DNA from: Ascoidea asiatica JCM 7603
Taxonomy: Eukaryota > Fungi > Ascomycota
NCBI GenBank assembly: GCA_001600695.1
Contig: BCKQ01000005.1
Coordinates: 859,820 to 923,819, forward strand
Direction of reading: 5' to 3'
Length of the DNA stretch: 64,000 nt
Part shown: positions 22,031-23,206 of the stretch, one piece after another
Numbering within the stretch: position 1 is the first letter of the stretch
How the letters are laid out: each line of letters begins with the position of its first letter
Position numbers and translations under genes: made by a program
Notes under the pieces: generated by a model
Database searches by the model: none
The model's input: the letters and a program-made list of their open reading frames with translations, nothing else
What the model was told of the DNA's origin: nothing

Positions 22031-23206
22031 ATGTTTTCTCGAAAAACATTATTTTTATTGTCACTAATGACATTAAATCAAGCTTCATTAGCTTCTGATT
22101 GTGCTGGTTTATATTATCAATGCGGTGGTTCAAGTTGGACGGGAGCAACATGTTGTGCAACTGGAACTTGTGTTTCTCAAAATGATTATTATTATCAGTG
22201 TGTTGAAACTTCTGATGCTGCTGATACTGTTGCAAATACTGTTGCAACTACCGAAGCTACTACATATGCTACTATAATCGCTGAGACTACAGCCACAGAA
22301 GCTGTTTCTTCCAGTATTCCATCTTCTGAATCAGCTGATGAAGTTACTGAAATAATAACAACTGAAGTGGATGCCACTGAAGCTGAAAGTGAAGTAACTA
22401 CTTCTCAAGCAGTCTCAACTGAAGCAACAACTGAAGTTGCAACTGATGAAAATGTTGCGGCTGTTACTACGTCTAATACATATTTTGCTACTTCTGAAGA
22501 TTCTGAATCTGTTTCTTATAGCTCTTTTTCAACTGTTACTTTATCTACATCATCTAAATCAGAAACAACTATTGCTGAATCAACAGGAAGTACTCTTTCA
22601 ACATCGACAACTTCCGGTACATCAAGTGTCATTGCAATTACCTCTGCTGCAGGTTCTACAAGCACTTCTGATTCAAAATATACTATTGGTGAAACTTTTG
22701 AATTAACAAATCCTTATTCAACTTGTACTGAAGCTTATGGTGTTTGTGGTAGTGGTGGTTCTGCTTGTTGTTATCTTGGTGCAACTTGTTCAACCGAAAA
22801 TGCTGATTATGCTCATTGTGTTCCAACTACAATTTTGAATACTGTTGTTACAACTTCTGTTACTGAACCTGATGGTAGTGTTGAAACAAAAGCTCTTTAT
22901 ACTGGTAGAGGTACTTATTGGACTCCATCTGATGGTAATGCTTGTGGGTTTTCTGGTATTTCTGAAGATGATTTTGTTGTTGCTATTGGTGCTGACACTT
23001 ATAATGAATCTATTGATCAATATTCAAAAAGTAGTGTTTGTGGTAAAACTCTTATTGCTCAATATGGTGAAAAAGCCGTTAAAGTTAGAGTTATAGATGA
23101 TTGTGCTTCTTGTGATATTTATAGTTTAGATTTTAGTCCAAGTGCATTTGCAGCATTAGCTTCAATGAGTGATGGTGTTATCGGTATTACTTGGTATTGG
23201 GATTAA
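22031..23206 (+). CDS. Secreted CBM1 + S/T linker + degenerate CBM1 + DPBB (loosenin/expansin-like) protein, 391 aa
   Basis: The likely start is the ATG at 22031 ([21 protein letters not shown] signal peptide). [19 protein letters not shown]...NDYYYQC is a CBM1. GTYW..GNACG...VCGK...[19 protein letters not shown]...ITWYWD is an RlpA-like DPBB. Confidence 0.9.

What the first reader, a model, noticed from the sequence alone, without database searches (positions are those of the whole stretch)
22031..23206. Secreted double-CBM1 loosenin/expansin-like protein in a budding yeast
Seen: signal peptide; an intact CBM1 (about 22100-22204) with the QCGG and NDYYYQC cellulose-binding aromatics; a roughly 170-aa Ser/Thr/Glu linker; a second degenerate CBM1 (about 22724-22819, [12 protein letters not shown]...YAHC); and a C-terminal DPBB (about 22898-23203). 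The DPBB keeps the expansin-type Asp (SLDFSPSAF) but has TYWT in place of the GH45 YWD base Asp, and there is no CBM63. Known: CBM1 is typical of filamentous-fungal cellulases and rare in Saccharomycotina; loosenins are DPBB-only; swollenin is CBM1 plus a full expansin. Inference: a non-hydrolytic cellulose-targeting, wall-loosening or adhesion protein with an unusual architecture, implying a wood, sap-flux or beetle-gallery lifestyle and a domain-shuffling or horizontal origin.
Basis: partly seen in the sequence, partly recalled or inferred. Interest (0 to 1): 0.85.

Follow-up and report, generated by a model that had tools for sequence, protein, structure and literature searches.

The report
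Cellulose-anchored loosenin-like protein of Ascoidea yeast
A wood-associated budding yeast (Ascoidea lineage) encodes a secreted protein that joins a cellulose-binding module, a second decayed copy of that module and an expansin-like "wall-loosening" barrel; this domain combination is rare but is built from well-known parts.

Summary
ORF 22031-23206 (+) encodes 391 aa: a signal-peptide-like N-terminus, a canonical CBM1 (Pfam 40.6 bits), a 172-aa acidic Ser/Thr linker, a six-Cys internal module and a C-terminal DPBB.

- **Internal module.** It fails Pfam on its own. Its counterpart in the closest full-length homologue, P0001, scores as CBM1 (27.5 bits). It aligns Cys-for-Cys to a CBM1 model and has dN/dS of 0.1-0.2.
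- **DPBB.** The model has pLDDT above 90. It is closest to the Streptomyces papain inhibitor, expansin domain 1 and loosenin PcaLOOL12, and far from GH45. Asp367, which aligns with the Asp of the D78N expansin mutant, is kept. The second acidic residue (Asp25 of GtEXPN) is Thr298. No CBM63 is present.
- **Host.** It is an Ascoidea-lineage yeast; eIF3c is 68% identical to A. rubescens.
- **Origin.** The DPBB belongs to a vertically inherited budding-yeast clade, so a horizontal origin is not supported for it. The CBM1s were added in this lineage.
- **Rarity.** Among the 150 best DPBB relatives, only one other protein carries a Pfam CBM1.
- **Genome context.** The genome also holds 8 CBM1-GH45 and 7 AA9 genes.

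The scan had already noted a paralogue of this gene and other CBM1 genes elsewhere in this genome.

Best reading: a cellulose-targeted, essentially non-hydrolytic loosening protein. This is untested, and no RNA data were found. I class it as a new variant of a known kind, of moderate interest.

The parts
22031..22096 (+). Signal-peptide-like N-terminus (residues 1-22; MFSRK, hydrophobic core, ASLA|SD)
   Evidence: Read from the translation. The 13 other CBM1 proteins of the genome have similar leaders that end 1-3 residues before the CBM1. No predictor was run.
22097..22204 (+). Canonical six-Cys CBM1 (residues 23-58; Cys24, 31, 41, 42, 47, 57; flat-face Tyr28, Tyr53, Tyr54, Asn51, Gln56)
   Evidence: Pfam PF00734 scores 40.6 bits, E 2.3e-10. 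PDB CBM1 chains 1cbh, 5x39 and 4qi4 match residues 27-58. It is 81-83% identical to the CBM1s of CBM1-GH45 and CBM1-GH5 proteins.
22205..22720 (+). Acidic Ser/Thr/Ala/Glu-rich linker (residues 59-230), probably O-glycosylated
   Evidence: Composition is 45% Ser+Thr, 27 Asp+Glu and 2 Lys+Arg. Only short 12-nt repeats are found. AlphaFold gives it no structure.
22721..22822 (+). Internal degenerate CBM1-derived module (residues 231-264; Cys232, 239, 246, 247, 253, 263). It has a 3-residue deletion of the G-x-W loop, Tyr31-equivalent changed to Asp259 and Gln34-equivalent changed to His262
   Evidence: No Pfam hit when scanned alone. The equivalent module of P0001 scores CBM_1 27.5 bits. A custom CBM1 HMM aligns all six Cys, and 0 of 2000 shuffles reach the score. 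dN/dS is 0.10-0.19.
22823..22894 (+). Short spacer (residues 265-288). Its C-terminal half ([12 protein letters not shown]) is modelled as a clade-specific beta-strand extension of the barrel
   Evidence: AlphaFold gives strands at model residues 47-54 and 60-72, with pLDDT rising from 74 to 91. dN/dS is 0.5-0.75.
22895..23203 (+). DPBB domain of expansin-D1/loosenin type (residues 289-391; Thr295, Thr298, Asp356, Asp367; Cys305, 337, 358, 361)
   Evidence: Pfam DPBB_1 scores 26.7 bits. PDB 5ntb E 2.4e-9, plus 9ce9 and 4jcw. Model pLDDT is above 90. Foldseek gives 5ntb TM 0.82 and 9ce9 TM 0.81. Asp367 aligns with Asp78 of Clavibacter expansin, the residue changed in the D78N mutant entry 4js7.

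Best explanation
The gene encodes a secreted, heavily O-glycosylated, very acidic protein (pI about 4). It tethers a loosenin-type DPBB domain to cellulose through an N-terminal CBM1 on a long flexible linker.

Proposed mechanism:
- The CBM1 docks its flat aromatic face (Tyr28, Tyr53, Tyr54) on crystalline cellulose. This supplies the cellulose affinity that single-domain loosenins lack and that canonical expansins get from CBM63.
- The DPBB then acts on the fibre surface through its shallow groove (Thr295, Asp356, Asp367). It disrupts non-covalent contacts between glucan chains, or between cellulose and hemicellulose, without appreciable hydrolysis.
- This would open the substrate for the yeast's own eight CBM1-GH45 endoglucanases and seven AA9 oxidases during growth in wood or beetle galleries.
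- The internal six-Cys module is a CBM1 derivative kept under purifying selection. It sits right next to the barrel and probably acts as a secondary, altered-specificity binding or spacer module.

Shown here: the domain identities, residue conservation, lineage-specific origin and genomic context. Inferred: secretion, glycosylation, cellulose binding, loosening and synergy.
For: - Domain calls: CBM_1 40.6 bits; DPBB supported by Pfam, PDB sequence search and profile search.
- Structure: DPBB pLDDT above 90. The nearest solved folds are SPI 5ntb (TM 0.82, rmsd 1.7 Å, 34% identity), bacterial and fungal expansin D1 domains, and loosenin PcaLOOL12 9ce9 (TM 0.81, rmsd 1.8 Å). GH45 matches only at E 1e-4 to 1e-3 and 12-16% identity.
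- Residues: Asp367 aligns with Clavibacter expansin Asp78 (the D78N mutant is entry 4js7). By motif spacing it corresponds to GtEXPN Asp87 and BsEXLX1 Asp82. Asp356 lies 11 residues before it, as Asp76 does in GtEXPN. Thr298 replaces GtEXPN Asp25, which is needed for that protein's weak xylanase activity.
- No Expansin_C/CBM63 in the protein or the genome.
- Literature: D1-only loosenins bind cellulose poorly, and a CBM drives cellulose binding (PMC12779228).
- Genome context: 14 CBM1 hits, 8 CBM1-GH45 and 7 AA9 genes.
- Selection: dN/dS is 0.13-0.27 for the DPBB and 0.10-0.19 for the internal module.
- Ecology: Ascoidea species live in decaying wood and bark-beetle galleries (PMC11876787).
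Against: - There are no expression data. No RNA run holds the locus.
- There is no biochemical test of binding or loosening.
- Loosenin activity is itself subtle and debated, and a related single-domain protein was recently reported to cleave xylan.
- The closest solved relative by sequence and fold is a protease inhibitor (SPI), so fold similarity does not fix the function.
- CBM1s can also bind chitin, and CBM1-less DPBB proteins are widespread in yeasts that do not degrade wood. The ancestral role may therefore concern the fungal wall.
- No GH6 or GH7 was found, so the yeast may not be a true cellulose degrader.
Confidence: 0.6

Rival explanations
1. It is a fungal cell-wall or adhesion protein. 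The DPBB remodels the yeast's own chitin and beta-glucan wall, as may be the role of the CBM1-less Ser/Thr-linker-DPBB proteins common in budding yeasts. Alternatively, the CBM1s simply glue hyphae to wood or to gallery walls, with no loosening of plant cellulose.
For: - The DPBB clade is vertically inherited. It occurs, without CBM1, in Ogataea, Brettanomyces, Pachysolen and Saccharomycopsis.
- A third paralogue in this genome (L017) is of that plain type.
- The genome also has CBM1-only and CBM1-mucin-like proteins, which look like adhesins.
- The title of a paper indexed states that loosenin-like proteins affect chitin as well as cellulose networks.
Against: - There is no GPI signal and no PIR repeats; the protein ends with the DPBB.
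- The N-terminal CBM1 keeps the full cellulose-binding face and is 81-83% identical to the CBM1s of the GH45 and GH5 enzymes.
- The CBM1-bearing clade is confined to a wood-dwelling lineage.
Confidence: 0.17
2. It is a weak glycanase: a catalytic expansin-related protein like GtEXPN_133317. It would slowly cleave xylan or another matrix glycan that coats cellulose, with the CBM1 concentrating it on the fibre.
For: - The GH45-type acid Asp367 and the assisting Asp356 are conserved.
- A single-domain fungal ERP was reported to cleave xylan in a manner dependent on Asp87 and Asp25 (bioRxiv 10.1101/2025.10.08.681111).
- Asp301 (PSDG) is invariant in the four-sequence alignment of the three paralogues and P0001 and could serve as an alternative base.
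Against: - The residue equivalent to GtEXPN Asp25 is Thr298.
- There is no Pfam GH45 match, and fold similarity to GH45 is weak.
- The reported activity needs 48 h and high protein concentration, and its relevance is disputed (PMC13415893).
Confidence: 0.1
3. It is a protease inhibitor or effector-like binding protein, as with the Streptomyces papain inhibitor SPI, kiwellins and cerato-platanins. It would be displayed on cellulose to protect secreted enzymes, or to act on insect or plant partners.
For: The best PDB match by both sequence and fold is SPI 5ntb (E 2.4e-9, 34% identity, TM 0.82). Kiwellins also rank high.
Against: - SPI shares the same conserved expansin-type residues, so the similarity is family-wide rather than specific.
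- No inhibitor-specific motif is known that could be tested.
- Fusion to CBM1 and co-occurrence with cellulases point to a carbohydrate target.
Confidence: 0.08

Closest known systems
Loosenins / loosenin-like proteins (LOOS1 of Bjerkandera adusta; PcaLOOL12 of Phanerochaete carnosa, PDB 9ce9) and single-domain EXPN proteins
   Same: It has the same DPBB fold (TM 0.81, rmsd 1.8 Å, 26% identity), the conserved Asp of the HFD-equivalent motif, no CBM63, and is secreted.
   Different: Loosenins are defined as D1-only proteins. This protein carries an N-terminal CBM1, a 172-aa linker and a second CBM1-derived module. The host is a budding yeast, not a basidiomycete.
Swollenin (SWO1 of Trichoderma reesei) and other CBM1-expansin fusions
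   Same: An N-terminal CBM1 on a long linker targets an expansin-type DPBB to cellulose.
   Different: Swollenin has a full two-domain expansin core (D1 plus CBM63) and a fibronectin-like region. Here there is no CBM63 anywhere in the genome. Instead, a degenerate CBM1 sits before the DPBB.
PpCel45A of Komagataella phaffii (five CBM1s + GH45; PMC3247070)
   Same: It is a budding-yeast secreted protein with several six-Cys-type CBM1s separated by Ser/Thr linkers, N-terminal to a beta-barrel domain of the GH45/expansin superfamily.
   Different: PpCel45A's C-terminal domain is a true GH45 endoglucanase. This protein's domain is a loosenin-type DPBB with no Pfam GH45 match, and it lacks the acidic residue at the YWD/TWFD position (Thr298).
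Streptomyces mobaraensis papain inhibitor SPI (PDB 5ntb)
   Same: It is the closest solved relative of the DPBB: E 2.4e-9, 34% identity, TM 0.82, rmsd 1.7 Å.
   Different: SPI is a bacterial single-domain protein described as a protease inhibitor, with no CBM. Nothing here tests inhibitor activity.
Ascoidea rubescens ASCRUDRAFT_82619 (XP_020045018.1; P0131), annotated 'RlpA-like DPBB domain-containing protein'
   Same: It has the same internal short six-Cys module and the same DPBB (65% identity over 172 aa). It shares the 3-residue deletion and falls in the same clade.
   Different: It lacks the N-terminal CBM1 and has a basic Thr/Arg-rich N-terminal region instead. By synteny it is the orthologue of the paralogue on contig C7 (L016), not of the window gene.

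Membership tests
CBM1 (PF00734), N-terminal module | Scores above the Pfam gathering cut-off | tested here: met
   40.6 bits against 20.6, residues 27-54.
CBM1 (PF00734), N-terminal module | Conserved Cys framework and three flat-face aromatics (Tyr5, Tyr31, Tyr32 of CBHI) | tested here: met
   It has six Cys. Tyr28, Tyr53 and Tyr54 align to 1cbh residues 5, 31 and 32 (query 28-58 to chain 5-36).
CBM1 (PF00734), N-terminal module | Binds cellulose | not testable with these tools
   Needs an Avicel or PASC pull-down.
CBM1 (PF00734), internal module | Scores above the Pfam gathering cut-off | tested here: not met
   No CBM_1 hit at E up to 10 when scanned alone. The equivalent module of P0001 does pass at 27.5 bits.
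CBM1 (PF00734), internal module | Cys framework colinear with CBM1 and homology beyond chance | tested here: met
   All six Cys align to a CBM1 HMM. It scores 16.3 bits against a shuffle mean of -3.9 (sd 2.9), and 0 of 2000 shuffles reach it.
CBM1 (PF00734), internal module | Three flat-face aromatics | tested here: not met
   Tyr236 and Tyr260 are kept. The Tyr31-equivalent is Asp259, the Gln34-equivalent is His262, and the loop with the conserved Trp is deleted.
Expansin sensu stricto / swollenin | Two-domain core: DPBB (D1) followed by CBM63 (D2, Expansin_C) | tested here: not met
   The protein ends with the DPBB. No PF01357 hit in the protein or anywhere in the genome.
Loosenin / single-domain expansin-related protein | DPBB fold like expansin D1, with the conserved Asp of the HFD-equivalent motif | tested here: met
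   9ce9 TM 0.81, rmsd 1.8 Å. Asp367 is invariant in 145 relatives and aligns to Clavibacter expansin Asp78.
Loosenin / single-domain expansin-related protein | Consists of the D1 domain only | tested here: not met
   It has CBM1, a linker and a second Cys module N-terminal to the DPBB.
Loosenin / single-domain expansin-related protein | Non-hydrolytic disruption of cellulose | not testable with these tools
   Needs fibre-weakening and product assays.
GH45 endoglucanase | Matches the GH45 profile or fold closely | tested here: not met
   No PF02015 hit, whereas the genome's real GH45s score 197-259 bits. Foldseek to GH45_C gives E 1e-4 to 1e-3 at 12-16% identity.
GH45 endoglucanase | Catalytic acid Asp plus catalytic base (Asp of YWD in subfamily A) | tested here: not met
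   The acid-equivalent Asp367 is present. The position after Tyr-Trp is Thr298, not Asp.

The most novel reading that the evidence does not exclude
The conserved pair of 'degenerate CBM1 + DPBB' may be a new two-domain wall-loosening unit: an independent, reverse-order re-invention of the expansin architecture in budding yeasts. The pair occurs in all four clade members, including the two that lack the N-terminal CBM1. Its spacer is only about 24 residues long and partly structured. In this reading a remodelled CBM1 takes the place of CBM63 and packs against the barrel to form one extended glycan-binding surface, perhaps for a non-cellulose ligand. The distal intact CBM1 would then be a later add-on for cellulose anchoring.
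Probability: 0.18. Interest if true: 0.7.

Novelty: new variant of a known kind. Interest (0 to 1): 0.45.

Why it matters
- **Mechanism.** Single-domain loosenins bind cellulose poorly, and how expansin-related proteins act is still disputed. A natural CBM1-loosenin fusion has two sister proteins that lack the distal CBM1: the C7 paralogue and the A. rubescens orthologue. Together they form a ready-made comparison set for asking what a CBM adds to a D1-only protein, and whether such proteins are catalytic.
- **Yeast biology.** The protein sits in a budding yeast that also carries eight CBM1-GH45 and seven AA9 genes. That is a far richer plant-cell-wall toolkit than is usual for Saccharomycotina, and it fits the wood and bark-beetle niche of Ascoidea.
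- **Application.** The protein comes from a yeast and is intron-less, so it should be easy to express, and it may be useful as a cellulase-boosting additive.

Tried and rejected
- **Pfam on the internal module alone.** Only sub-threshold Granulin and Agouti matches. The CBM1 assignment therefore rests on the homologue P0001 and a custom HMM.
- **Single-sequence AlphaFold of the whole protein.** Useless, with mean pLDDT 36. The alignment-based model resolved only the DPBB. The internal module stayed below pLDDT 50, so its packing is unknown.
- **Word-indexed homologue searches.** They found only P0001 and missed the A. rubescens orthologue, which the exhaustive profile search then found. Their blanks are not evidence of absence.
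- **GH45 hydrolase reading.** Rejected.
- **Expansin or swollenin membership.** Rejected because there is no CBM63.
- **Horizontal transfer of the DPBB.** Rejected by the tree and the names of clade members. The tree is the quick IQ-TREE version on 111 columns because the careful search did not finish, so only the starred nodes are used.
- **Shared promoter motif.** Tested upstream of 15 genes: 13 of the 14 CBM1 genes (L010 not included) and the two DPBB paralogues. CGGNTAAW is not enriched (3 sites in 15 kb), and no 7-mer is convincing after multiple testing.
- **Bacterial promoter/terminator scan.** Uninformative for a yeast.
- **Expression evidence.** Only DNA runs hold the locus.
- **Literature searches.** Ascoidea+CBM1, Ascoidea+GH45 and the assembly accession of P0001 all returned nothing.
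- **DNA for P0001 and P0003.** Not retrievable because the sample files are too large. The truncated N-terminus of P0001 and its source organism remain unresolved.
- **Window-gene orthologue in A. rubescens.** I could not search that genome for an orthologue at the rearranged locus.
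Full report
**1. What is there**

Window 22031-23206 (+) is one open frame of 391 codons, from ATG to TAA. The longer TTG-started ORF in the mechanical list is an artefact of bacterial start rules. The frame has 35.7% G+C against about 27% around it. It has no CTG codon, so the CUG reassignment of this yeast clade cannot change the protein.

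Pfam finds CBM_1 at residues 27-54 (40.6 bits, cut-off 20.6). It finds DPBB_1 at residues 337-387 (26.7 bits, just under 28.8). Sequence search of the PDB matches residues 290-389 to three groups:
- the Streptomyces papain inhibitor 5ntb (E 2.4e-9);
- an RlpA-like DPBB protein, 9ce9;
- domain 1 of bacterial and fungal expansins (4jcw, 7wvr, 9ms5).

Residues 27-58 match CBM1s of cellobiohydrolases and of a GH45.

The layout is as follows:

| Part | Residues | Notes |
|---|---|---|
| Leader | 1-22 | MFSRK, hydrophobic core, ASLA\|SD |
| CBM1 | 23-58 | canonical six-Cys form |
| Linker | 59-230 | 45% Ser+Thr, 27 acidic and 2 basic residues |
| Internal six-Cys module | 231-264 | degenerate CBM1 derivative |
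| Spacer | 265-288 | |
| DPBB | 289-391 | expansin-D1/loosenin type |

The mature protein has pI about 4.

**2. The second Cys module**

Scanned alone, the module gives no CBM_1 hit. Three results nevertheless show that it derives from a CBM1.
- The closest full-length homologue, P0001, has the same architecture. It is 368 aa, 40% identical over 91% of the query. Its module at the same position scores 27.5 bits against Pfam CBM_1, above the cut-off.
- I built an HMM from 19 other CBM1 modules: 12 from this genome and 7 from search hits. It aligns all six Cys of the window's module end to end. The observed score is 16.3 bits against a mean of -3.9 (sd 2.9) for 2000 composition-preserving shuffles, and none of the shuffles reaches it.
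- The alignment shows what changed. A 3-residue deletion removes the G-x-Trp loop. The Tyr31-equivalent flat-face aromatic is Asp259, and the Gln34-equivalent is His262. Tyr236 and Tyr260 are kept.

The deletion is shared by the paralogue on contig C7 and by the A. rubescens protein, but not by P0001.

The module is not decaying. Its pairwise dN/dS is 0.10-0.19, as low as the DPBB (0.13-0.27) and lower than the spacer (0.5-0.75). dS is near saturation, so these values are rough. The module is therefore a maintained CBM1 derivative whose cellulose-binding face is impaired. That last point is inferred from the known role of the three aromatics.

**3. The DPBB**

I modelled residues 225-391 with an alignment of 145 relatives. 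AlphaFold gives pLDDT above 90 for residues 269-391. The internal module stays below 50, because only four sequences cover it.

Foldseek against the PDB ranks the following:
- SPI 5ntb: TM 0.82, rmsd 1.7 Å, 34% identity;
- expansin D1 domains: 9ms4, 3d30, 9ms5, 7wvr, 4jcw;
- kiwellins;
- loosenin PcaLOOL12 9ce9: TM 0.81, rmsd 1.8 Å.

GH45 subfamily C enzymes appear only at E 1e-4 to 1e-3 with 12-16% identity.

Asp367 (SLDFS) aligns with Asp78 of the Clavibacter expansin, the residue changed in the D78N mutant entry 4js7. It is invariant in the 145-sequence alignment. By motif and spacing it corresponds to Asp87 of GtEXPN_133317 and Asp82 of BsEXLX1. Asp356 lies 11 residues earlier, as Asp76 does in GtEXPN. 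Thr295-Tyr296-Trp297-Thr298 corresponds to Thr22-Trp23-Phe24-Asp25 of GtEXPN.

The protein therefore keeps the universal acid. It lacks the second acidic residue that GtEXPN needs for its slow xylan cleavage, and it lacks the YWD base of GH45 subfamily A. No Expansin_C/CBM63 is found in the protein or anywhere in the genome.

**4. Whose genome, and what else is in it**

The neighbouring genes are ordinary eukaryotic housekeeping genes: eIF3c, ferric reductase, FtsJ methyltransferase, PRMT, a kinase and a cyclin. The eIF3c is 68% identical to that of Ascoidea rubescens and 53% identical to that of Saccharomycopsis crataegensis. GOGAT is 89% identical to the A. rubescens protein. The host is thus an Ascoidea-lineage budding yeast, but not A. 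rubescens itself. The assembly is 20.3 Mb in 71 contigs; the window itself is about 25% G+C.

The genome holds the following:
- 14 Pfam CBM1 hits: eight on GH45 endoglucanases, one on a GH5, one on a CE8 pectinesterase, two on short stand-alone proteins, one on a mucin-like protein, and the target;
- seven AA9 genes;
- three DPBB genes;
- no detectable GH6, GH7 or CBM63.

**5. Relatives and history**

An exhaustive profile search with the DPBB finds 3924 cluster representatives at E up to 1e-3. Of the best 150, 149 match DPBB_1 and only one, P0001, matches CBM_1. No large ESM Atlas cluster near the fold combines the two families.

In a quick maximum-likelihood tree, the window protein groups with its C7 paralogue (L016) and A. 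rubescens ASCRUDRAFT_82619 (P0131), with SH-aLRT 95. P0001 is their sister, with support 98. This group nests in a 30-row clade (support 96). The named members of that clade are all Saccharomycotina: Ogataea, Brettanomyces, Ambrosiozyma, Pachysolen and Saccharomycopsis. Those proteins, and the third paralogue L017, are simply a Ser/Thr-rich linker plus a C-terminal DPBB.

The barrel is therefore native to budding yeasts, and the CBM1s were added in the Ascoidea lineage.

P0131 is the syntenic orthologue of the C7 paralogue. Two upstream genes are shared, and identity is 71%. Both lack the N-terminal CBM1.

The simplest history has three steps:
- An ancestor had the form CBM1-linker-CBM1-DPBB, as P0001 still does.
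- A 3-residue deletion then arose in the proximal CBM1.
- The gene then duplicated, before this species and A. rubescens split, and one copy lost the distal CBM1.

The trifurcation is unresolved. The two paralogues in this genome are slightly more alike (73%) than the orthologues are (71%). Gene conversion or independent gain therefore cannot be excluded.

The window gene lies exactly where synteny with A. rubescens breaks. There, eIF3c abuts the cation-efflux and GOGAT genes. In the window, those two genes lie 34-43 kb away in inverted orientation.

The distal CBM1 is 81-83% identical to CBM1s of GH45 and GH5 enzymes of this yeast and of an unnamed relative. This fits module shuffling within the lineage.

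**6. Mechanism and rivals**

The best-supported reading is a cellulose-anchored loosenin. The CBM1 supplies the cellulose affinity that D1-only proteins lack; PMC12779228 reports that loosenins cluster by low cellulose binding and that a CBM drives binding. The barrel, through its Thr295/Asp356/Asp367 surface, loosens fibre contacts without significant hydrolysis. This would assist the yeast's GH45 and AA9 enzymes. I put this at 0.6.

The rivals are:
- a role in the yeast's own wall, or in adhesion (0.17);
- a slow glycanase like GtEXPN (0.10), made less likely by Thr298;
- an SPI-like inhibitor or effector-like binder (0.08).

None of these can be settled without experiments. No RNA data exist in the indexed runs; the locus is present intact in DNA runs of two studies.

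**7. Comparison with what is known, and novelty**

The parts are all known. Loosenins and EXPNs are single-domain proteins. Swollenins are CBM1 plus a full expansin. Multi-CBM1 proteins already exist in yeasts: PpCel45A has five CBM1s plus GH45 (PMC3247070). AA9 genes occur in Geotrichum candidum (PMC5596469).

Three things are not described in the literature I could search:
- a D1-only expansin-related domain fused to CBM1;
- a conserved remodelled CBM1 immediately upstream of the barrel;
- its occurrence in Ascoidea.

It fails membership tests for expansin and swollenin (no CBM63), for loosenin in the strict sense (not single-domain) and for GH45. It works most like a swollenin-style targeted loosenin. 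I class it as a new variant of a known kind, with interest 0.45.

The scan had already noted the C7 paralogue and several other CBM1 genes on other pieces of this genome. I re-derived them independently here.

Noticed in passing
G000 contigs C1, C3, C7 and C19 (e.g. C1:173552-177170, C19:210138-213995): There are seven AA9 lytic polysaccharide monooxygenase genes, four of them in two close pairs. They sit alongside eight CBM1-GH45 genes, and no GH6 or GH7 was detected. This is an unusual oxidative-plus-GH45 cellulose toolkit for a budding yeast.
   Followed up: partly
window 20675-63551 versus L018 (A. rubescens KV454475.1): Synteny with A. rubescens breaks right at the target gene. In A. rubescens, eIF3c abuts the cation-efflux and GOGAT genes. 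In the window, those two genes lie at 54-63.5 kb in inverted orientation, with about 33 kb of other genes in between.
   Followed up: partly
L016:799-1833 (G000:C7:706787-707821) and L019:8001-8960: The paralogue without the distal CBM1 and its A. rubescens orthologue start with an odd beta-strand-like Thr/Val/Lys/Arg-rich segment (KIITVTDINTHVV... and KVRVTHTKYRTRYFTSRKTRYRTV). A similar basic Thr/Arg-rich stretch occurs in the CBM1 mucin-like protein at L013.
   Followed up: no
window 22031-23206 versus L016 and L019: The two paralogues within this genome are slightly more alike (73% over 172 aa; dS 0.69) than the C7 paralogue is to its syntenic A. rubescens orthologue (71%; dS 1.9). This hints at gene conversion between the paralogues or at faster change in A. 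rubescens.
   Followed up: partly
P0001 (GCA_015689235.1, 2.6-kb contig) and P0003 (SRR10968246): The only other protein with the same architecture, and a very similar CBM1-GH45, come from unnamed data sets too large to fetch. They may be yeast DNA inside a much larger (host?) assembly. The gene call of P0001 starts inside its first CBM1.
   Followed up: partly
G000:C22:23251-29067: Two CBM1-GH45 genes lie head to head about 4.6 kb apart (matches at 23251-23844 on the minus strand and 28474-29067 on the plus strand). Their catalytic domains are nearly identical, which points to a recent local duplication.
   Followed up: no
window 23649-26876 (-): The neighbouring 1075-aa protein has a C-terminal PH_12 domain and is swollen by long poly-Asn and Asn/Ser/Thr runs.
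   Followed up: no
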